Assembly (NCBI GenBank): GCA_011109175.1
Contig: RDEW01000004.1
Coordinates: 2,129,444-2,162,443, forward strand
DNA from: Dicyema japonicum
Lineage: Eukaryota > Animalia > Dicyemida
Direction of reading: 5' to 3'
DNA: 33,000 nt
This document shows, piece after piece, positions 669 through 33,000 of the stretch (position 1 is the stretch's first letter; each line of letters starts with the position of its first letter). The notes beneath the pieces were generated by a model. That model was not told where the DNA came from. It made no database searches and saw nothing but the letters and a program-made list of their open reading frames with translations. A program made the translations under genes and the position numbers.

Positions 669-756
669 TTAAATTACATATTTTAACTAATAAATGAAAT
701 ATTTAGATAAGGTTAATATAATTATAAAATGTAATAAAAAATTGATTTAATATGCT

Positions 757-3377
757 GTGCTGGTTGCTCTAACCAGCACGATCCAGATGGATGTTCTAAT
801 TATAAACGAAACTAAATTGAAGAAAAGACCATTTAAAATTGATGAATACGACTCATTAGATATTTTTTGGAAGACTGGTTCTTGTGCTGGAACAGGAACT
901 TCAATTTACTACAAAACTTCTTTAAATACAATACTACCCACGATCAATGAAGAAAATCTTTGTGAACTAGCAAGCATTCAACTACAAACAACCATGGGAT
1001 GGATAACTATCGGAGGAATCTATTCTAAAAAACTACGAGAGTATCCATGGATTGTTGACATATTTATGGAAAACAATGAATATCCAATCCTTGTTGGGGA
1101 CATGAACGCTAAACATACTGAATATGGTTGTGTAACAACCAAACAAGATGGAAAATGCCTTGTAAAACGGATGAAGTCTGGAGAGTTAAAGATTTTAACG
1201 TCGATCGAAATTAATCACTTTGCACCGAGTAGTGGGGACAAGCTCGGAGTTTTTGTGATGCCTCAGAATCTGAGCAAAATTTGTGAGCACCCATATGTGG
1301 AGCAAGATATTGGAAGCGACCATCTTCCACAAACTTTGGAAATAAGGACGGGGCCTATATCTGCTGAAAGAACTTTTGTTGGCTACAATTTTAATAATGT
1401 CAACTGGGTTGATTTCGATTATTTTATACGGGTGAAACTGGGAAATGTCTGTGATCTATTGATCTTGGACTCCTCAGATATTGATTACTTGGATGACAAA
1501 ATTAGGACTTTGATATTGTGTTATTTGGACGAATATGGAAATAAAAAATTCCATATGCCGCATGGATGCTCATCAATGAGCTTAAAAGAAGATTCCCTTC
1601 ATCGAGAGAAAAAATCACTTGAAAGTAAACTGAAAAGATGTTGGAACATTCCCGACTCGGAAAAGCTAAAGGTGCCGCATGGATGCTCATCAATGAGCTT
1701 AAAAGAAGATTCCCTTCATCGAGAGAAAAAATCACTTGAAAGTAAACTGAAAAGATGTTGGAACATTCCCGACTCGGAAAAGCTAAAGGTTCAGATCAGC
1801 TTAGTGAAAAATGAATTAATGGAAATATCCAAACGAAAACAGGAAAATAAATGGATAAGAGAATGCTCAAAGATCAACCACAAGAATGCAGACTTTTGGA
1901 AAGTATTCGCGAGATTGAAATCCTCTGATGATAAATGTGATGAAATACACCTAAAATCATCTAATGGTTGTTGTATTTCAAAGGGGGGAATCCCAGAAAT
2001 TCTACGGCAAGTTAGCAAAAATTCAAGAAGTAGATTCTGCTTCCATTATTCCATGTGAATTTCGAAGCAATAATCGTCACTATGATAGGATGGTGTCAAT
2101 GAAGGGTCCTATGTGTACTCCTATTTCCCCTGAAGAAGTAAAAATTGCGATTAATAGCTGCAAGAACAAAACCCCTGGATGGAATTTTATCCCAATGAAA
2201 ATATTTAAGAATGCAAATTCTATGTTAATTGATGCATTAACCATGTTTTATAATGCCTCGTGGAAATTTGCTCACGTTCCATCGACCTGGAAAAAGTCAA
2301 TTGTTCGGATGATTGGAAAGAAAGTAAAATCAAGATCTAATCCAGAAAATTATAGACCAATTAGTCTTATTTGTTCAACTTCAAAAATTATGGAAAAATT
2401 GTCTTCAATAGATTATCAAAAGTGGTTGAGGAAAACAATTTTCTTGCAAACAATCAGTGGGGGTTCCGTAAAAATAGAGGAACTGAAAACTGCATCCGGG
2501 AACTTAGGAAGTCAATTCAAGAATCTATAAGTAAGAAAGAATACCTTACTGCAACGTGTTTGGACATATCCAATGCTTTTGACAGTATCTGGCATTAAGG
2601 ACTTCTCGAGACATTGTCAAAGGCGAACATTGGAAAGTCGGCGCTCATGTGGATTAGAGACTTCCTTATGGGAAGAGAGTCTTATATTCGTGTGGGAAAT
2701 ATGCTCTCTAAAAAGATAAAACTAAGTAGAGGTGTTCCACAAGGTTCAATTTTGAGTCCCCTCCTCTTCAACTGTATAATGAGCGAGGTGCCAAAACCGG
2801 AACACATCAATACCAAAATGATAATTTATGCAGACGACATTCTAATTTTGGACACTAGTATGAATAAATCATGGAAAAGAACAGTAGCTCATATGTCGAA
2901 AATCGAAGATTGGTGTCGGAATAATGGATTGACATTATCAAGAGAAAAAAGTTCTGTAACCTGGATAGCGAGAAATAGGAGGAATCAATATGTTGATACA
3001 GGGAATGTTAAATTCTCGGAAAACCTGATATACCTTGGAGTATGCATTAACAAAAAAGGATCGTTTAAAGAGCACATCAAAATACGAAGAGAGAAAGCTA
3101 CGGGAATGCTCAAGTCCCTACTCCGCTTTCATTTGTCTCCAGATACTTTTATATTTGTATACAAAACGTGTATTGAACCATCCTAATATATGGATATCAA
3201 GGTTGGTTTAAAACAGAGGAGGAATCAGTCCTACTAACTAAATTAGAAAAGACAAGAAGGTATGCAATTAAACTCGCACATGGATTGGATTTAGCATCTG
3301 AAATTGATGACGAATACGAAAGAAAAACGAGAAGAATCGGTGATTTATTACATTGCTTGTGGAAACTCGCATTGTAA
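757..3377 (+). pseudogene. Disrupted ORF2 (AP endonuclease-reverse transcriptase) of family A copy 1
   Basis: It is colinear with ORF2 at 29343-31906 but is broken by frameshifts (~1990-2030, ~2390-2410, ~3183) and a nonsense TAA at 2596-2598. The stop is at 3375-3377. Confidence 0.9.
1556..1790 (+). repeat. Exact 117-bp in-frame tandem duplication inside ORF2
   Basis: Units 1556-1672 and 1673-1789 both encode PHGCSSMSLKEDSLHREKKSLESKLKRCWNIPDSEKLKV (39 aa). The 29-31 kb relative has a single unit. Confidence 0.95.
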
Positions 3378-3750
3378 TTGGGGCTTTTTACGGAGAAGAG
3401 ACATACGGTGTCTCATGAGAGTGCCCCGATATAGACGACCCCAAATCTTGGCTTTCCTCTTTAGTTAATGGCTCTTACCTTGTTTAGTTAGTTGGGGTTT
3501 TGCGAATAAATTATGTTATCTTATCTGATTTAATATTGGTCTGTTAGTACAAAACTCAAAGCCATAAAAAAAATTCCTGATCGACCGTTTTCATTTTTTT
3601 GCAACTTCAAAAATTTTTACTTTTTATTTTTAGAAGAATTATTATTTTAATATAAATATAAATTCTAAAATTTAATTATATGATACTCATTCTAAATGCG
3701 TAACTTTCAAGTAACCTTAGAAGAATTTCAAGTAGGAAAGCACTGCAGTG

Positions 3751-7559: not shown

Positions 7560-8260
7560 ATGGGGGATTACGTTTTTAAAAATACTGCTGTGAGGCTTGG
7601 ATTCTTCAGGAGGTATTCCACCTTCCACCTAGAATTCAGAAAAGAGGAGGACAAAAGGAACTTTTTTAAACATGTGAATGCTACTTCGCCTTTTGGTCTT
7701 GGAAACCATCACTTCAGTGAAATCCGAGTGAGACCGTCCGAAATTGTTTTGAAGAACCTGCCTTTTTGGGTTAATGATAACGACCTTCATGAATTTATCA
7801 AAGAATTAGCTCCCTCTACCATGAGCATATGTCGTTTCTACAAGGGAGATAAGAGACTCTCTCTTGCAAAGGTTCTAGTTGACTCCAGGACGGAGACTAC
7901 ATCGCTTGTTCATCTTGGTTTCAACATTTTCTACTTGCCAATCACAAAAAAAGGCCCACCGAGGTTTTTCAACTACCAACGCTATGGACACATATCATCA
8001 TTCTGTAAGAAGACGAGATGTCTCCGTTGTTCAAAGAAACACGACCTAACTGCGTGTGAAGAGACTCATGGGAGCACAATAAAATGCATAAATTGTGGCT
8101 CGTCTTCACATTGGCAGGATATGGTGGATGTCCAGCCGCCAAAAAGTCTGCTCAAAAGAAAGCAACGAAAAACGATGGACTAGCGATTATGGGAAAACAT
8201 GGACAGCAAAGACGATTACGTCAAACCCGGCTTCGGGATTTTTTAAAAATTCCAATTCTT
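7560..8260 (+). pseudogene. LINE ORF1 (gag-like, three zinc knuckles), frameshifted
   Basis: It aligns by eye to ORF1 at 28438-29343 (SPFGLG..IVLKNLP vs NPFGLG..IILKNVP). Degenerate CCHC knuckles are present (YQRYGHISSFC, CLRCSKKHDLTAC, CINCGSSSH..YGGC). Confidence 0.85.
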
Positions 8261-8339
8261 CTATATTAAAACTTTCTGGATTTTCACGAACACGTGTACA
8301 TGCTTACAAACATTGACCCACTTCATTCGAGTCGGATTT

Positions 8340-9350
8340 ACAAGCAAGCCAAGACACTTAAAAACAGTGCTCTGCTCGATTGACATGCACAAAGCTTTTG
8401 ACTCAGTCTCGAGGAAAATTCTATCGAAAAAAAATATTTCAATCGGAGATCCCAGGAAAGCTCAAACTTTGGATCACCAACTTCCAAAGTGGACGAAGGG
8501 GACGTGTTTGTCTCAAAGGTCTGAAATCAATCTCATGTCTCCTCTCCAACAGAGTCCCTCAAGGATCTCCTTTATTCCCTGCTCTGTTTAATTTCTTTTT
8601 TGCCGATCTCCTAACTCTTGAATCTGATAGTGGTGTTCTATTCTCCTATGCGGATGATTTTGTGTTGGCTTCACGAGATCAGGACATCTAGAAGGCCACA
8701 AAAAGAATACAAATCAACCTGGACCGACTTAATGCCTGGATAATAGAAAACCGGCATGGATGAGTGCAGAAAAGTCAATCACTTCCTTTTTCACCTCGTC
8801 AAAAAATTGGGAAGGAGGACAGTCTCCTTGAAGGTAGACAAGGACGATTTCCCCTTCAACAGGTGTCAGAGATATTTGGAGTGACAGTTGATATGCATTT
8901 TTGTTCATCACTCCATATTCAAAACATTCTCACAAAATCCGAAAGGAAAATTAATATTCTAAAGACCTTATCTGGAATATGGAAGGTCGCCACTCACCCA
9001 ATACTGAAGAACATTTACAAGCAGTACATCGAGCCATTTATCTCATATGCACGCGCTTCGTAAGGACCCTCCATCTCATATACAAATAAAAGAAAAGTGG
9101 AGGAAATCCAGAAGAGGGCTTCATAATTACGGAGTGATGGACTCGTGGGGAACATGGATCCGGAAGTCTTCATGCGGCTAGATTCTGGGATGACTCAAAG
9201 CTCCTCTGCAAACAGCCGCCCGATATGTACATATGTGGGATCGAGAGAGGAACATAGTGCAAAGATGAGGACTTTATTCGAACATATTGGGATCACCTGA
9301 TAGTTAGTTTCGATTTTTACCGTGGTCTTGGGGTGTTTAAATAAAATAAA
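8340..9350 (+). mobile_element. LINE family B-like RT remnant and 3' end (probably the same, internally deleted, element as the ORF1 at 7560)
   Basis: IDMHKAFDSV, VPQGSPLFPALFN, YADD and YKQYIEPFISYA motifs are present. It ends in a GGGATCACCT..GGGGTG..(TAAA)n 3' end. Confidence 0.8.
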
Positions 9351-28060: not shown

Positions 28061-28437
28061 TTACTTAATGCGTCCCGAAAATCATCAGGAAAAATCATTT
28101 AGTGACGTTTTTCTGTTTAGTAGAAATTTTAATTTAATAAAATTTATATTATCAATAATTAAAATGATGTAAATTATATTTTTTAATGTTGTGGATAATT
28201 TGACTAGTTTAAAGCAAACTTTGTTCAGATATAAAACTTCATTTTTTCAAAAATTTAAAGTTCAATCATTAATACGGGACGATTGCAATTAAAAATTTAA
28301 ATGTTCTGTGTCAGGTTAATTATTAATTCTAAACATGGGAATTTAACTATTGTTAACATCTTTGATGGGATGGAATCAGCCAGAAGAGCTAGGATTCTCG
28401 TCGACATACTGGCGATTTTATCCTGCAGTTTAAGAAC

Positions 28438-29343
28438 TTGGAAGACCTTGAAGATTTCAAAAAGTCAATGAATGATAGTAATCCTTTTGGATTGGGTGGA
28501 CATGAGATGGAGGAAGTAAAACTGCCTCCTTCGACTATAATTCTAAAAAATGTTCCGACATGGATAGAGATGGATGAATTAAAGGATTTTCTTCGGTCAA
28601 AGTTGACAGGAGAGTTCCGAGCTGAAAGATTTGTACGCCGTGGTGTTAGCTTGCCTATTGTTAAGCTTGTCTTAACAAGCAGGGGAGAAGCAGAATCCAT
28701 TGTCAGATTGGGATTGATTATTGGATTTTTGAAGATGAAAGCGGAATGGTATATAAAACGAGAAATTCAGTGTTTTCGTTGTCAACAGTTTGGACATATT
28801 GCTCGGTTTTGCAAGAACTTAGAAAAGTGTCTACATTGTTCGGGATCACATAGAAGATCTGAATGTAAAGCATCGCATGATACAAAAAATTGTGTTAATT
28901 GTGGGTCGACTACTCATCTGGCAAATTATGGAGGTTGTCCGAAAGCTATGGAAGCCAATCGTGAGAAAATGAAGAAAGTTGCTGAAAAGTCAAAAGTCTC
29001 CAAAAAAGAAGATAAGAAACTTGCCAAATCCGGAAATAGTCATACTATAGCAAAAAATGCTAAGTCAGCTTTTCTTGATGGTCGAACTTGTTGGAATATT
29101 CCAACGGTCAAAAGGGCAACAGTAGAAGCTTCTACTCAGACAGAAGAACCTGTGAAGGGAAAGAAAGAAGAAATCTCAACACAGGTCAATGATGGTGAAT
29201 GTCAACTTGATTATTCACAAACTTTGAAAAAATTAGAGAAAAGCATTATAGAAGTAACGAAAACAAAAAAGGATACGAAGCATTTATTGGATTTGGTGGC
29301 GATCCTAAGAGGAGGGATCAGCCACCAAAAAAATCAGAAGTAA
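28438..29343 (+). CDS. LINE ORF1 gag-like nucleic-acid chaperone (N-terminus continues upstream across a probable 1-nt deletion near 28398)
   Basis: CFRCQQFGHIARFC, CLHCSGSHRRSEC and CVNCGSTTHLANYGGC knuckles are preceded by an RRM-like IILKNVP region. Confidence 0.85.
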   Translation: MEDLEDFKKSMNDSNPFGLGGHEMEEVKLPPSTIILKNVPTWIEMDELKDFLRSKLTGEFRAERFVRRGVSLPIVKLVLTSRGEAESIVRLGLIIGFLKMKAEWYIKREIQCFRCQQFGHIARFCKNLEKCLHCSGSHRRSECKASHDTKNCVNCGSTTHLANYGGCPKAMEANREKMKKVAEKSKVSKKEDKKLAKSGNSHTIAKNAKSAFLDGRTCWNIPTVKRATVEASTQTEEPVKGKKEEISTQVNDGECQLDYSQTLKKLEKSIIEVTKTKKDTKHLLDLVAILRGGISHQKNQK

Positions 29344-29413
29344 TCAGGATAACCCTGATTAATGCCCGCTCTCTTCGGAAGCGGGCTTCAGAGCTGACTG
29401 CATTGGTCAGCAC
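29328..29413 (+). promoter_or_regulatory. Candidate -1 programmed ribosomal frameshift signal with three tandem hairpins
   Basis: A_AAA_AAT lies in the ORF1 frame, followed by spacer CAGAAG, then TAATCAGG-ATAAC-CCTGATTA, GCCCGCT-C-TC[TTCG]GA-AGCGGGC and GCTGACT-GCATT-GGTCAGC. Confidence 0.7.
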
Positions 29414-31906
29414 AGTGCATATGGATGTTTTGATAGTAAATGAGACGAAGATCAAGAAGGGAAGTTCTTTTAAACTTAATGGATTTTCATCAATTGATAT
29501 TCCGTGGAAGAAGGGTTCTATTTCTGGAACTGGAACTTCGATTTATTATAAATCTAATTTGAATACGAAGAGACCAAGAATTATTGAAGAAGATGTATGT
29601 GAACTAGTCAGTGTGCAAATACAAACAAATATTGGATGGATAACAGTTGGAGGAATTTATTCTAAGAGCTTACGTGAGTACCCTTGGATCATTGAGAAAT
29701 TTTTTAACGAAAACGTGAATTCGATTTTGGTTGGGGACATGAACGCAAAGCATGTTGATTATGGATGTGTTACAACAAATCAGGATGGAAAATGTCTTAT
29801 AAAGTGGATGGAATCAGGAGAATTGAAAATTTTGACGTCAGCAGAAATAAATCACTATGCAACTTATAGTGGTGATAAACTTGGATTGTTCATAATGCCT
29901 CTGACGATGAGTGAAATGTGTGATCCTCCATATATCGAAAATGACATAGGAAGTGACCACATCCCACAAACGATTGAATTAAAAACTGGTCCGGTTTACA
30001 CACGACAGTTATTCATTGGATATGATGTCAGCAAAATTGATTGGAATCACTTCAATTTCTACATCAGGCTGAAAATTGGTAATGTTTGTGATTTGGGGAT
30101 TTCGAAACCGGAAGATATCGACATTCTGGATAACAAAATAAGATCTTTGTTGTTAAGTTATCTGGAAAATTATGGAAAAAGAAAAAATCTGTTGCCGCAG
30201 GAAAATATGATAATAGGAGTAGAAGAACGCTCTTTGCGTCAGGAGAAGAATAAGTTAGAAAATAAATTAAAGAGGTGTTGGGATATCTTCGACTCTCAAG
30301 AACTTAAAATGCAGATCAAGTTAGTGAAGAAGAAAATAATGGATGTTGTAAAGAAGAATGAAGAAAAAGTATGGAAAAGAGAATGTTCAAAGTTACGTCG
30401 ACAGAACCCAAAATTTTGGAAACTATATGCAAGAATGAATTCTCCCAGTAATAAGAATGAAGAAATATCTCTCAAGTCAGATGATGGTCTCACTATTCCA
30501 AAAGAAGAAATTCCAAATGTTTTACGTCGACAATTGTCCAAAATTCAAGAGATAGATCCGGCATCTTTTATTCCGATAGAAGTACAAGATACAAGAAGTA
30601 GTTATAAAGAAAAGTCGAAATTGAGTGGTCCCTTGTGTCATCCTATAACGCTGGAAGAAATAAATGCTGCAATTAAGGGTTGCAAAAATAAAGCACCAGG
30701 GTGGGATTTTATCCCAATGAGTATTTTCAAGAACGCAGGCCCAATTTTGATTGAGTGCCTAAAAATATTATATAATTCTTCTTGGAGTTTTGGTCATGTT
30801 CCAGCTTATTGGAAACGAACAATTGTACGCATGGTTGTGAAAAAAGGAAAGCCAAGGTCAAAAGCAGATAGTTATAGGCCAATTAGCCTAGTCTGCTCAA
30901 TATCGAAAGTTATGGAAAAAATTGTTTTCAATCGTCTATCAAGGCATGTTGAGGATAATAATTTTCTCTCTGATAATCAACTGGGATTTCGGCATAAAAA
31001 AGGGACTGGAGATTGCTTTAAAGAGCTAAGATCTGCAATCGAAATTTCACGAAATAAAAAGGAATTTCTTACAATAGCATGTTTGGATATAACAAAAGCG
31101 TTTGACAGTGTTTGGCACTTTGGACTTGTTGATACGTTGTCAAAAGCAGAAATTGGGAAAACTGCGTTATTATGGATAGAAAACTTTCTTTCAAAAAGAA
31201 AGTCATATATACGTGTTGGAAATTTAATTTCAAAGAAAATTGAATTGCGAAGAGGAGTTCCACAGGGTTCAATTCTCAGCCCGCTACTCTTCAATTGCGT
31301 AATGAGAGATTTGCCAAAACAGAGAGCGTAAATAGTCAAATGATTATTTATGCTGATGACATTCTTGTGCTTGATTCAAGCATGAATAAACAAATTTCAT
31401 GGAAAAGGGTGGAATCCCATATTACTAAGATTGGAAAGTGGTGCCAAAACAATGGGTTGACTCTATCGAGGGAAAAAACAACAGTCACTTGGATTGCAAG
31501 TAAAAGAAAAAATATTAATCAATGTGTGAATACTGGGGATATAAAAATCTCTGAAACATTGAAGTATCTCGGATTGTTGATAGACCGAAGAGGATCTTTC
31601 AAGGAACATATTAAAACACGAAGAAAGAAAGCTACAGGAATGTTGAAATCTTTAATTCGATTTCATTTGGAGCCTGAAACTTTTCTTTTTGTGTATTCGG
31701 CGTGTGTTGAACCATTCTTGATATATGGTTATCAAGGATGGTTTAGAACAAAAGAAAGTGATGTCTTTGTCAAAAAATTGGAAAAGTCCAGAAGATTTGC
31801 GATTAAATTGGCATATGGACTGGACTTAAAATCTAATATCGAAGAGGATTACGACCTGAAAGTCAGAAAGATAGAAAAATTATTACATCACTTATGGAAA
31901 ATGTGA
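29343..31906 (+). pseudogene. LINE ORF2 AP endonuclease-reverse transcriptase, no in-frame ATG before the first APE motif; single 1-nt frameshift at ~31316
   Basis: IRITLINARSL, VNETK, LVGDMNAKH, GSDHIP, YRPISL, LDITKAFD, GVPQGSILSP and YADD are present. The frame is open from 29211, overlapping ORF1 in the -1 frame. Confidence 0.9.
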
Positions 31907-32081
31907 TGTAATTTTTGGGGTCCAAACGAAGTAGAGACATGTGGTGTCTCATAAAATGACCCTACACGATGAATACAAACCCACTTAATTAGTTTTGGTT
32001 CAGGTTTTGGTTTCTTTACAGTAATTAGTTTTGGGGTTTGTTAGAAAATAAAATTTGTCTTGTCTATGGACGAAAAAGTAT

Positions 32082-32735
32082 TGAAGCTAACATTGCGAAG
32101 AAAAACAAAATTGACCAAAAAAAGGAAAGAATCGAATGGAAAATTATTTCTAAAACGAGAAAATGCCCATAATGGAGAAAGTGAAGTTTCCAAAACTGGA
32201 ACGAATAAGAAATTAAAGTCAGAGTTTAGAATGTATGGGCAGACTGGCTGGAATACGACATATAATAAGAAACCTTCTAAAAAAGAAACAGTAGAAGCTT
32301 CAACACAGAGAATAGAGTGGTGCTCTTAAGAAGAGAGGGCAGCCACCGAAAAAACCAGAAGTAGTCAGGATAACCCTGATTAATGCCCGTTCTCTTCGGA
32401 AACGGGCCTCAGTGCTGGTTGCTATAGCCAGCACGATCCAGATGGAAGTTCTAATTATAAACGCAACTAAATTGAAGCACATGGATTGGATTTAGCATCT
32501 GAAATTGATGACGAATACGAAAGAAAAACAAGAAGAATCGGTGATTTATTACATTGCTTGTGGAAACTCGCATTGTAATTGGGGCTTTTTACGGAGAAGA
32601 GACATACGGTGTCTCATGAGAGTGCCCCGATATAGAAGACCCCAAATCTTGGCTTTCCTCTTTAGTTAATGGCTCTTACCTTGTTTAGTTAGTTGGGGTT
32701 TTGCGAATAAATCATGTTATCTGTTATCTGTTATC
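32082..32735 (+). mobile_element. Non-autonomous, internally deleted derivative of family A subfamily 1
   Basis: An ORF1 3' piece, the junction hairpins and the first ~115 nt of ORF2 are joined at 32477/32478 to the ORF2 end and 3' UTR, which are near-identical to 3277-3520. The tail is (TGTTATC)3, and the 15-bp repeat TGGACGAAAAAGTAT lies at 32067-32081 and 32736-32750. Confidence 0.85.
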
Positions 32736-32750
32736 TGGACGAAAAAGTAT

Positions 32751-33000
32751 ATACGTGTTGGAAATTTAATTTCAAAGAAAATTGAATTGCGAAGAGGAGT
32801 TCCACAGGGTTCAATTCTCAGTCCGCTACTCTTCAATTGCGTAATGAGAGATTTGCCAAAAACAGAGAGCGTAAATAGTCAAATGATTATTTATGCTGAT
32901 GACATTCTTGTGCTTGATTCAAGCATCAATAAACAAATTTCATGGAAAAGGGTGGAATCCCATATTACTAAGATTGGAAAGTGGTGCCAAAACAATGGGT
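32751..33000 (+). mobile_element. 5'-truncated family A subfamily 2 copy running off the window
   Basis: It is nearly identical to ~31210-31460, with an intact LPKTESVNSQMIIYADD frame. Confidence 0.9.

What the first reader, a model, noticed from the sequence alone, without database searches (positions are those of the whole stretch)
29328..29413. LINE with a retrovirus-like -1 frameshift cassette fusing ORF1 (gag) to an ATG-less ORF2
ORF2 overlaps ORF1 in the -1 frame and has no ATG before the first APE strand (IRITLINARSL); the first Met lies inside the domain. The last ORF1 codons form a correctly phased X_XXY_YYZ heptamer (A_AAA_AAT, 29328-29334). A 6-nt spacer follows, then an 8-bp hairpin whose base is the ORF1 stop codon, a 7+2-bp hairpin capped by a C(UUCG)G tetraloop, and a third 7-bp hairpin. 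A slip here yields ..QK-K-SEVIRITLIN.., placing the fusion at the APE N-terminus. -1 frameshifting is standard for retroviruses and LTR elements. Characterised LINEs instead use reinitiation (SART1 UAAUG, L1) or internal initiation, so a Gag-APE-RT fusion LINE would be unusual.
Basis: partly seen in the sequence, partly recalled or inferred. Interest (0 to 1): 0.85.

Follow-up and report, generated by a model that had tools for sequence, protein, structure and literature searches.

The report
Octopus LINE ORF1–ORF2 junction module
An octopus jumping gene (LINE) has a conserved three-hairpin RNA module where its first gene stops and its second begins; most relatives start the second gene with an ATG overlapping the stop, but this lineage has lost that ATG and carries a correctly placed slippery site, so it may be the first LINE to reach its reverse transcriptase by ribosomal frameshifting.

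Summary
A_AAA_AAT (29328-29334) is in phase with ORF1. A 6-nt spacer follows, then three hairpins (29341-61, 29364-86, 29393-411; z = -3.8). ORF2 is in the -1 frame and has no ATG before 29421, downstream of the endonuclease's N-terminal Asn.

The window is octopus DNA. Related LINE families in Octopus sinensis share the -1 arrangement, and three of them share the three hairpins with compensatory changes (8 pairs changed on both sides; 0/500 shuffles). Four relatives have ATGA, an ORF2 ATG overlapping the ORF1 TGA. One has GTGA and one has an ATG 22 nt upstream. Family D has ATGA and the same three hairpins.

The frame relation and the hairpins therefore come from a SART1-like stop-start coupling module. 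They are not evidence for frameshifting by themselves.

Only families A and B lack ATG or GTG (GTAA, GTAG), and only they have the in-phase heptamer (A_AAA_AAT, A_AAA_AAC). Their ORF2 evolved under purifying selection (dN/dS about 0.1).

My estimates: -1 frameshifting that reuses the old hairpin, about 0.43; AUG-independent termination-reinitiation, about 0.35. The heptamer statistics are weak: chance occurrence is about 2-3%, and only three copies were available.

The parts
28319..32065 (+). Family-A LINE copy (APE-type non-LTR retrotransposon). It runs from the 5' UTR to a 3' end with no poly(A).
   Evidence: 85% nt identity to Octopus sinensis locus L004 over window 28319-32063. Pfam finds APE and RT. 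The 3' end is a doubled hexamer.
28468..29343 (+). ORF1, intact, 291 codons plus TAA. It has three CX2CX4HX4C knuckles.
   Evidence: zf-CCHC scores 19.1 bits, just under the cut-off. It is 75% identical to the ORF1 of L004 and 60% identical to P0031.
29328..29334 (+). In-phase X_XXY_YYZ heptamer, A_AAA_AAT.
   Evidence: Read. Identical in L004. A_AAA_AAC in the family-B copy at 32349-32355. Absent at the homologous place in families C to H.
29335..29340 (+). 6-nt spacer (CAGAAG). It is invariant in the three A/B copies.
29340..29343 (+). GTAA: the ORF1 stop TAA overlapped by an ORF2-frame GTA. Relatives have ATGA or GTGA at this position.
29341..29361 (+). Hairpin 1: 8 bp, 5-nt loop, with the stop codon at its base.
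   Evidence: Three of its pairs show changes on both sides across families A to D.
29364..29386 (+). Hairpin 2: a conserved 7-bp stem over the Ala-Arg...Arg-Ala codons. The inner 2 bp and the UUCG loop are not conserved.
   Evidence: C-G changes to U-A through two synonymous changes in family B.
29393..29411 (+). Hairpin 3: 7 bp.
   Evidence: 100% of cells are paired, and 4 of 7 pairs changed on both sides. It is also intact in the truncated B copy at the start of the window.
29340..31906 (+). ORF2 (APE + RT). There is no ATG before 29421. This copy is broken by one frame change and has no in-frame stop otherwise.
   Evidence: dN/dS of about 0.1 against family B over 337 codons. About 890-aa relatives begin 4-14 residues before the position aligned to 29343-29345.
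29361..29363 (+). Codon of the conserved N-terminal Asn of the endonuclease fold.
   Evidence: The Pfam Exo_endo_phos match starts here. A weak profile alignment matches it to the Asn of ExoIII-type nucleases.
29421..29423 (+). First ATG in the ORF2 frame. It lies inside the APE domain.
31907..32065 (+). 3' UTR with a conserved 6-bp hairpin (31934-31950) and a terminal doubled hexamer.
32349..32432 (+). Second junction module, family B: A_AAA_AAC, the same spacer, GTAG, and three hairpins. It sits inside a short, internally deleted element.
   Evidence: (z = -5.4).

Best explanation
The region is the ORF1/ORF2 junction of an octopus LINE. It consists of an inherited translational-coupling module plus a lineage-specific change.

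Shown:
- The ORF1 stop sits at the base of the first of three conserved hairpins.
- ORF2 is in the -1 frame because the ancestral arrangement was an ATG overlapping the stop (ATGA), as still seen in sister families.

Inferred:
- In families A and B the ATG was lost (GTAA, GTAG).
- An in-phase A_AAA_AAY heptamer 6 nt upstream of hairpin 1 now lets a small fraction of ribosomes translating ORF1 slip -1 while hairpin 1 sits at the mRNA entrance.
- These ribosomes continue into APE-RT as an ORF1-ORF2 fusion. The remainder terminate two codons later and make ORF1 protein alone.
- The old hairpin and the pre-existing -1 frame would have made this switch a short evolutionary step.
For: - Geometry: the heptamer phase, the 6-nt spacer and hp1 at position +13 from the P site are all read directly.
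- A_AAA_AAC, the family-B form, is listed among the shiftiest heptamers for eukaryotic ribosomes (PMC5009743).
- Phyletic pattern across eight families. Families D, E, F and H have ATGA, G has an ATG 22 nt upstream, and C has GTGA; none of these has a heptamer. A and B have neither ATG nor GTG, and both have the heptamer.
- The two differences between A and B in or next to the heptamer (CAA to CGA, AAT to AAC) both preserve the slippery pattern. Heptamer plus spacer are conserved 13/13 and 12/13, against 75-90% in the flanks.
- The three other in-phase heptamers of ORF1 are all lost in L004.
- ATGA is kept across deep divergence, including a 24%-identical metagenomic relative. This argues that the AUG matters in this clade and that its loss needed compensation.
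- ORF2 of the AUG-less lineages was under strong purifying selection (dN/dS about 0.1), and the window copy is nearly intact. ORF2 was therefore expressed without an AUG.
- The strand carrying the catalytic Asn lies upstream of the first ATG.
Against: - No expression data are available.
- Only three A/B junction copies could be obtained, and they represent one evolutionary event.
- The heptamer could be a by-product of a Lys-Asn tail in an A-rich ORF1. There are 4 in-phase heptamers in 292 codons, which gives a chance of about 2-3%.
- The conservation excess is not significant on its own.
- hp1 is only -8.5 kcal/mol, which is modest for a frameshift stimulator.
- hp2 and hp3 remain under selection in A and B through compensatory changes. 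A simple frameshift cassette would not need them, so this suggests the ancestral coupling function persists.
- LINEs have no protease, so an ORF1-APE-RT fusion would have to work uncleaved.
- -1 frameshifting into ORF2 has not been established for any LINE in the literature I could read.
Confidence: 0.43

Rival explanations
1. AUG-independent or near-cognate termination-reinitiation. Ribosomes finish ORF1 at the stop at the base of hairpin 1. They are held by the downstream three-hairpin structure, as in SART1, and resume in the overlapping -1 frame without an AUG. The resumption codon in family A could be the AUC that overlaps UAA, or another nearby codon. ORF2 protein is made separately from ORF1 protein, and the heptamer is incidental.
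For: - The module is shared with ATGA relatives, and family D has the same three hairpins.
- The SART1 UAAUG coupling needs downstream RNA structure (PMC5972666, PMC10275272, PMC3708506).
- Near-cognate starts support up to about 45% reinitiation in TURBS systems (PMC10275272).
- L1 ORF2 initiation is considered independent of its AUG (PMC5009743).
- Family C with GTGA looks like an intermediate.
- The stop position is kept in families A to D with three different stop codons.
- hp2 and hp3 are still maintained in A and B.
- Family A reads UAAUC, one base away from the SART1 pentamer.
Against: - The overlapping codon is GUA, which is two mismatches from AUG.
- Family B reads UAGUC and has no near-cognate at the overlap.
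- ATGA is strongly conserved in the other families, which suggests the AUG is not dispensable here.
- This model leaves the co-occurrence of AUG loss with a correctly spaced in-phase heptamer to chance, at about 2-3%.
Confidence: 0.35
2. Slippage of a polymerase on the A7 run (29327-29333). RNA polymerase II, or the element's own reverse transcriptase in the previous cycle, adds one A. This produces a subpopulation of transcripts or copies in which ORF1 and ORF2 are in one frame.
For: - The seven-A run is read directly.
- A-runs at the junction of family-C copies differ by small indels, which shows these runs are unstable.
Against: - In family B the run is only six A's and is interrupted upstream by G.
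- No data on transcripts are available.
- Runs of 6-7 A are frequent elsewhere in the element: there are 14 runs of 6 or more.
Confidence: 0.06
3. The AUG-less lineages cannot make ORF2 protein. They were copied in trans by ATGA-type relatives, or they are simply decaying.
For: - The window copy has one frame change in ORF2.
- L004 and the B copies are damaged or truncated.
Against: - dN/dS of about 0.1 between A and B ORF2 over 337 codons.
- ORF1 is intact and ORF2 has only one break in the window copy.
- A neighbouring copy is 98.8% identical.
- Compensatory changes in the hairpins arose within A and B.
Confidence: 0.05
4. ORF2 starts at a created or downstream AUG. One route is A-to-I editing of the ORF2-frame AUA in the loop of hairpin 1 (29349-29351) to an AUG-equivalent. 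The other is initiation at the first genomic ATG (29421), which would give an N-terminally truncated endonuclease.
For: - AUA is present in A and B.
- That coleoid cephalopods edit RNA extensively is my own background knowledge and was not tested here.
- The ATG at 29421 is conserved in families A, B and C.
Against: - Family C has AUU at that loop position.
- Loops are poor ADAR targets (own knowledge).
- Starting at 29421 would remove the first strand and the conserved Asn. All relatives with an ATG include both.
Confidence: 0.05

Closest known systems
SART1 (Bombyx mori R1-clade LINE) UAAUG stop-start translational coupling
   Same: A bicistronic LINE RNA in which the ORF1 stop overlaps the ORF2 start, so ORF2 is in the -1 frame. 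RNA secondary structure downstream of the overlap is needed (PMC5972666, PMC10275272, PMC3708506). Octopus families D, E, F and H have ATGA overlaps. D and F have strong hairpins at and after the overlap.
   Different: The octopus relatives use ATGA, not UAAUG. The window's family has no AUG at all (GTAA) and carries an in-phase slippery heptamer. Kinship with the R1 clade is not shown: the TRAS1 endonuclease is only a weak profile hit, E = 0.12.
-1 programmed ribosomal frameshift cassettes of retroviruses, LTR elements and astroviruses (X_XXY_YYZ, spacer, stem-loop)
   Same: An in-phase heptamer of the A_AAA_AAY type, a 6-nt spacer, a downstream hairpin, the ORF1 stop shortly after the site, and the polymerase gene in the -1 frame (heptamer shiftiness from PMC5009743).
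   Different: The host element is a LINE with no protease. The stimulator is a modest 8-bp hairpin that is older than the heptamer and is shared with non-frameshifting relatives. No product has been shown.
Human L1 unconventional, AUG-independent ORF2 translation
   Same: ORF2 is reached from a bicistronic LINE RNA without dependence on its AUG (PMC5009743; PMC5972666).
   Different: L1 has a 63-nt inter-ORF spacer and no overlap (PMC5972666). The octopus element has overlapping frames and a conserved structure at the stop.
TURBS-dependent termination-reinitiation (caliciviruses, influenza B segment 7)
   Same: Overlapping or adjacent stop-start signals (AUGA, UAAUG, AUGnnUGA) and low-efficiency coupling. 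The non-cephalopod relatives L007 and L008 have the 8-nt overlap form.
   Different: TURBS lies upstream and carries a UGGGA core (PMC5972666). No UGGGA occurs in the 180 nt upstream of the stop here. The conserved structure is downstream.
HeT-A gag frameshift (Drosophila telomeric non-LTR element)
   Same: A non-LTR retrotransposon in which frameshifting is needed for expression (PMC5009743).
   Different: That frameshift lies within gag of an element without a reverse transcriptase. It is not a gag-to-RT junction.

Membership tests
APE-type non-LTR retrotransposon (LINE) | ORF2 with an N-terminal apurinic-endonuclease-like domain followed by a reverse transcriptase | tested here: met
   Pfam Exo_endo_phos, Exo_endo_phos_2 and RVT_1. 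104,653 relatives found in the representative search.
APE-type non-LTR retrotransposon (LINE) | ORF1 with a nucleic-acid-binding module (CCHC knuckles) upstream on the same strand | tested here: met
   Three CX2CX4HX4C motifs in the translation. zf-CCHC scores 19.1 bits against a cut-off of 20.8.
APE-type non-LTR retrotransposon (LINE) | Assignment to a named clade (Jockey, CR1, R1 and so on) | tested here: inconclusive
   The nearest non-cephalopod hits are unnamed arthropod or metagenomic proteins at 24-34% identity. One relative's ORF1 has a weak PRE_C2HC hit. There is no poly(A), and the 3' end is a doubled hexamer. No reference set was available for a tree.
-1 programmed ribosomal frameshift cassette | X_XXY_YYZ heptamer in phase with the upstream ORF | tested here: met
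   A_AAA_AAT at 29328-29334.
-1 programmed ribosomal frameshift cassette | Downstream ORF in the -1 frame and open through the shift site | tested here: met
   The ORF2 frame is open from 29211.
-1 programmed ribosomal frameshift cassette | Stable RNA structure 5-9 nt downstream | tested here: met
   6-nt spacer. hp1 is -8.5 kcal/mol, which is modest. The whole module has z = -3.8. Covariation supports the structure.
-1 programmed ribosomal frameshift cassette | Heptamer conserved in relatives that share the arrangement | tested here: inconclusive
   Kept in 3 of 3 A/B copies with shift-preserving changes. Absent in families C to H, which have ATG or GTG. The sample is too small for significance.
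-1 programmed ribosomal frameshift cassette | Trans-frame protein product | not testable with these tools
   No expression or proteomic data are available here.
Stop-start termination-reinitiation coupling (SART1 type) | ORF2 AUG overlapping or adjacent to the ORF1 stop | tested here: not met
   The window has GTAA, with the first ATG 78 nt downstream. The feature is met in relatives L001, L003 (two copies), L006 and L012.
Stop-start termination-reinitiation coupling (SART1 type) | Required RNA structure downstream of the stop-start site | tested here: met
   The structure is present and covarying. Whether it is required was not testable.
Stop-start termination-reinitiation coupling (SART1 type) | ORF2 translation depends on termination of ORF1 | not testable with these tools
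   Needs expression data.
TURBS-type reinitiation | Upstream UGGGA motif complementary to 18S rRNA | tested here: not met
   No TGGGA in 29160-29340 (read). The homologous stretches of families B to D differ from one another.
Known RNA families (Rfam) | Match to a curated frameshift or other RNA element | tested here: not met
   No match at E <= 1 over 28300-32800.

The most novel reading that the evidence does not exclude
A LINE lineage switched its way of reaching ORF2 from stop-start termination-reinitiation to -1 ribosomal frameshifting. The ATGA overlap had already put ORF2 in the -1 frame. A conserved hairpin already sat at the stop. A slippery A_AAA_AAY arising 6 nt upstream was then enough, and the AUG was lost afterwards. 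This would give a Gag-Pol-like ORF1-APE-RT fusion in a non-LTR element.
Probability: 0.4. Interest if true: 0.8.

Novelty: new variant of a known kind. Interest (0 to 1): 0.62.

Why it matters
How LINEs translate ORF2 from a bicistronic RNA is a long-standing open question. Only SART1 and L1 have been examined in depth (PMC3894237, PMC3708506).

This locus gives two things.

1. It is a second, independent and strongly covarying example of a downstream RNA structure at a LINE stop-start overlap. The structure is present in several octopus families.

2. It provides a natural series within one genome: ATGA, GTGA, then GTAA or GTAG with a slippery heptamer. In that series the same structure may serve two recoding mechanisms.

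If frameshifting is confirmed, it would be the first LINE to make a Gag-Pol-like fusion. It would also show how one recoding mechanism can evolve from another. If it is not confirmed, it would be a second LINE, after L1, whose ORF2 is translated without an AUG, here with a defined RNA structure.

Tried and rejected
- **More family A/B copies.** I could not obtain any.
  - The ORF1 search gave one hit.
  - The APE-domain search gave none.
  - An exact look-up of the window's ORF1 found nothing.
  - DNA pattern scans of metagenome and prokaryote-genome collections found nothing.
  - A covariance model of the module found no further junctions in the 170 kb held, apart from the truncated B copy.
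- **Kojima et al. 2005 (PMC1190309)** is not held. Its findings are cited through reviews.
- **Literature searches** for an established -1 frameshift into LINE ORF2 returned none.
- **PDB searches.** A sequence search with the APE domain gave no hit. A six-sequence profile gave only weak ExoIII and TRAS1 hits.
- **Rfam:** no match.
- **The second LINE in the window (757-3527)** was examined as a comparator for the junction. It is truncated at hairpin 3.
- **The ORF1-like gene at 7560-8183** lacks an APE domain and gives no junction.
- **A pseudoknot** between the hp1 loop and downstream sequence was looked for by eye and not seen.
- **Rejected readings:** ORF2 starting at 29421, because this would lose the catalytic Asn strand, and a dead lineage, because dN/dS is about 0.1.
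- **Clade assignment** was left open.

Full report
**1. What is in the sequence**

The window is AT-rich eukaryotic DNA. Its best protein matches are Octopus sinensis gene models.

Positions 28319-32065 hold one LINE copy, which I call family A.
- The 5' UTR is about 150 nt.
- ORF1 runs 28468-29343. It is intact and has three CCHC knuckles.
- ORF2 has APE and RT domains and is broken once by a frame change.
- The 3' UTR ends in a doubled hexamer with no poly(A).

- A_AAA_AAT is in the ORF1 phase.
- Six bases follow.
- Then come three hairpins, the first with the TAA stop at its base.
- The 86-nt segment folds to -34.6 kcal/mol, against -22.1 +/- 3.3 for shuffles (z = -3.8).
- ORF2 lies in the -1 frame and is open from 29211.
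- Its first ATG is at 29421. This is downstream of the Asn codon (29361-29363), where the endonuclease fold begins.

**2. Relatives**

I fetched Octopus sinensis loci through annotated fragments and compared junctions one frame at a time. At least eight families share the ORF1 type and the -1 ORF2.

| Family | Source | Junction |
|---|---|---|
| A | window; L004 (85% nt identity) | GTAA |
| B | short deleted element at window 32067-32730 | GTAG |
| C | two copies in L002 | GTGA |
| D | L001 | ATGA |
| E, F | two elements in L003 | ATGA |
| H | L006 | ATGA |
| G | L005 | ATG 22 nt before the ORF1 TGA, at the place where A has its A-run |

More distant relatives from other organisms show the same theme: ATGA in L012 and L013, an 8-nt ATG-to-stop overlap in L007, L008 and the P0045 contig, a stop with one base before the ATG in L011, and a 17-nt spacer in L009.

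In the library-wide search, ORF2 proteins of about 890 aa begin 4-14 residues before the position aligned to the codon after the window's ORF1 stop.

Close or overlapping stop and start codons are therefore the rule in this group, and the -1 frame follows from the ATGA overlap.

**3. The hairpins are real and older than the heptamer**

Families A, B, C and D align without gaps from the heptamer position to hairpin 3. Counts on that alignment for the three-hairpin structure:
- 93% of cells are paired, against at most 45% when partners are slid.
- Eight pairs are changed on both sides.
- 0 of 500 shuffles reach the observed covariation.

Examples of compensatory change:
- hp1: U-A to C-G in family C, through two amino-acid-changing substitutions.
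- hp2: C-G to U-A in family B, through two synonymous changes.
- hp3: four of seven pairs changed on both sides.

Family D has a canonical ATGA and folds into the same three hairpins with z = -7.6. Family F wraps its ATGA in a 13-bp hairpin (z = -4.8). Families E and H are not significantly structured.

The UUCG cap of hp2 is not conserved. No Rfam family matches.

Reviews report that SART1, the one LINE where stop-start coupling was dissected, needs a complex RNA structure downstream of its UAAUG (PMC5972666, PMC10275272, PMC3708506). The module is best read as the octopus counterpart of that arrangement.

**4. What is special about families A and B**

They alone lack ATG or GTG at the overlap, and they alone have an in-phase canonical heptamer six bases before hp1: A_AAA_AAT in both A copies and A_AAA_AAC in B.
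- The substitutions that separate A from B in and next to the heptamer keep it slippery.
- Heptamer plus spacer are 13/13 and 12/13 conserved, against 75-90% in the flanks.
- The three other in-phase heptamers of ORF1 are all lost in L004.
- With the heptamer in the P and A sites, hp1 starts at +13, at the mRNA entrance.
- ORF2 of A and B evolved under strong purifying selection (dN/dS about 0.1 over 337 codons, with dS saturated).
- The window copy has an intact ORF1, a single break in ORF2, and a 98.8% identical neighbour.

These lineages therefore expressed ORF2 without an AUG.

**5. Weighing the mechanisms**

For -1 frameshifting:
- the geometry;
- the exclusive association of the heptamer with loss of the start codon;
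- the deep conservation of ATGA elsewhere, which implies the AUG matters in this clade and that its loss needed compensation.

Against -1 frameshifting:
- The heptamer has a 2-3% chance of arising at that spacing in this A-rich, Lys-rich ORF1.
- The conservation excess is not significant with three copies from one evolutionary event.
- hp1 is modest (-8.5 kcal/mol).
- hp2 and hp3 are still maintained in A and B.
- No protease exists to release ORF2 from a fusion.

For the rival, AUG-independent or near-cognate reinitiation:
- it is the ancestral mechanism;
- family C offers a GTGA intermediate;
- there is precedent for near-cognate reinitiation and for AUG-independent L1 ORF2 translation;
- family A reads UAAUC.

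Against the rival:
- GUA is not a near-cognate start codon;
- family B offers none at the overlap.

My estimates are: frameshifting 0.43, reinitiation 0.35, polymerase slippage on the A-run 0.06, a defective lineage 0.05, and an edited or downstream start 0.05. The statement that the region is a conserved translational-coupling module is much firmer, at about 0.9.

**6. Comparison with what is known, and novelty**

The module works like the SART1 junction, but it fails that family's defining start-codon feature in this lineage. It meets the sequence-level features of a -1 frameshift cassette, but no product has been shown. I found no established case of -1 frameshifting into a LINE ORF2 in the literature available. 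I rate it a new variant of a known kind.

**7. Limits, and a slip**

- The clade was not assigned.
- Family B's junction is known from a single deleted copy.
- I could not obtain more A/B copies.
- The primary SART1 paper was not available.

Slip: my first notebook entry and the hit tables printed by my scripts show the boundaries of reading-frame pieces in damaged copies. This indirectly places their frame changes. I noticed this later.

Noticed in passing
window 747-3526: A 5'-truncated family-B LINE copy, 52% ORF2 amino-acid identity to the main element. Homology begins inside the junction at hairpin 3, which is intact with one further pair-improving change.
   Followed up: partly
window 32067-32730: A short, internally deleted family-B derivative. 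It holds remnants of the ORF1 tail, a complete junction module and about 39 ORF2 codons, joined directly to the last 254 nt or so of the element (98% identical to 3276-3527). It keeps the junction hairpins and the 3' end. This may be a chance deletion or a non-autonomous form.
   Followed up: partly
window 32748-33000: A second family-A copy, 98.8% identical to the RT region of the main copy, running off the window end. The order is A, B-mini, A', head to tail. This suggests recent activity or a local duplication.
   Followed up: no
window 7560-9300: Another LINE family. Its ORF1 has three CCHC knuckles (36% identical to the main ORF1) and is followed directly by RT motifs. The endonuclease part is missing.
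   Followed up: no
window 31934-31950 and 3398-3414; ends at about 32054-32065 and 3515-3526: A 6-bp 3' UTR hairpin (GAGACA/TGTCTC) is conserved between families A and B. Both elements end in a doubled hexamer instead of poly(A), as in LINEs whose RT recognises a specific 3' end.
   Followed up: no
window 29322-29327; L005 6505-6513: The six bases before the A-run (GCCACC) resemble a strong initiation context (my own knowledge). Family G has its ORF2 ATG immediately after the same motif. This hints that a start codon once sat where the heptamer now is.
   Followed up: partly
L002 10253-16520: Two family-C copies lie in inverted orientation facing each other. Both carry GTGA at the junction, and small length differences in the A-rich tract upstream of it.
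   Followed up: no
L007 2472-2563; L010 354-445: Distant non-cephalopod relatives with ATG-to-stop overlaps also show significant local RNA structure at or after the overlap (z = -3.8 and -4.75). L011, L012 and L009 do not.
   Followed up: partly
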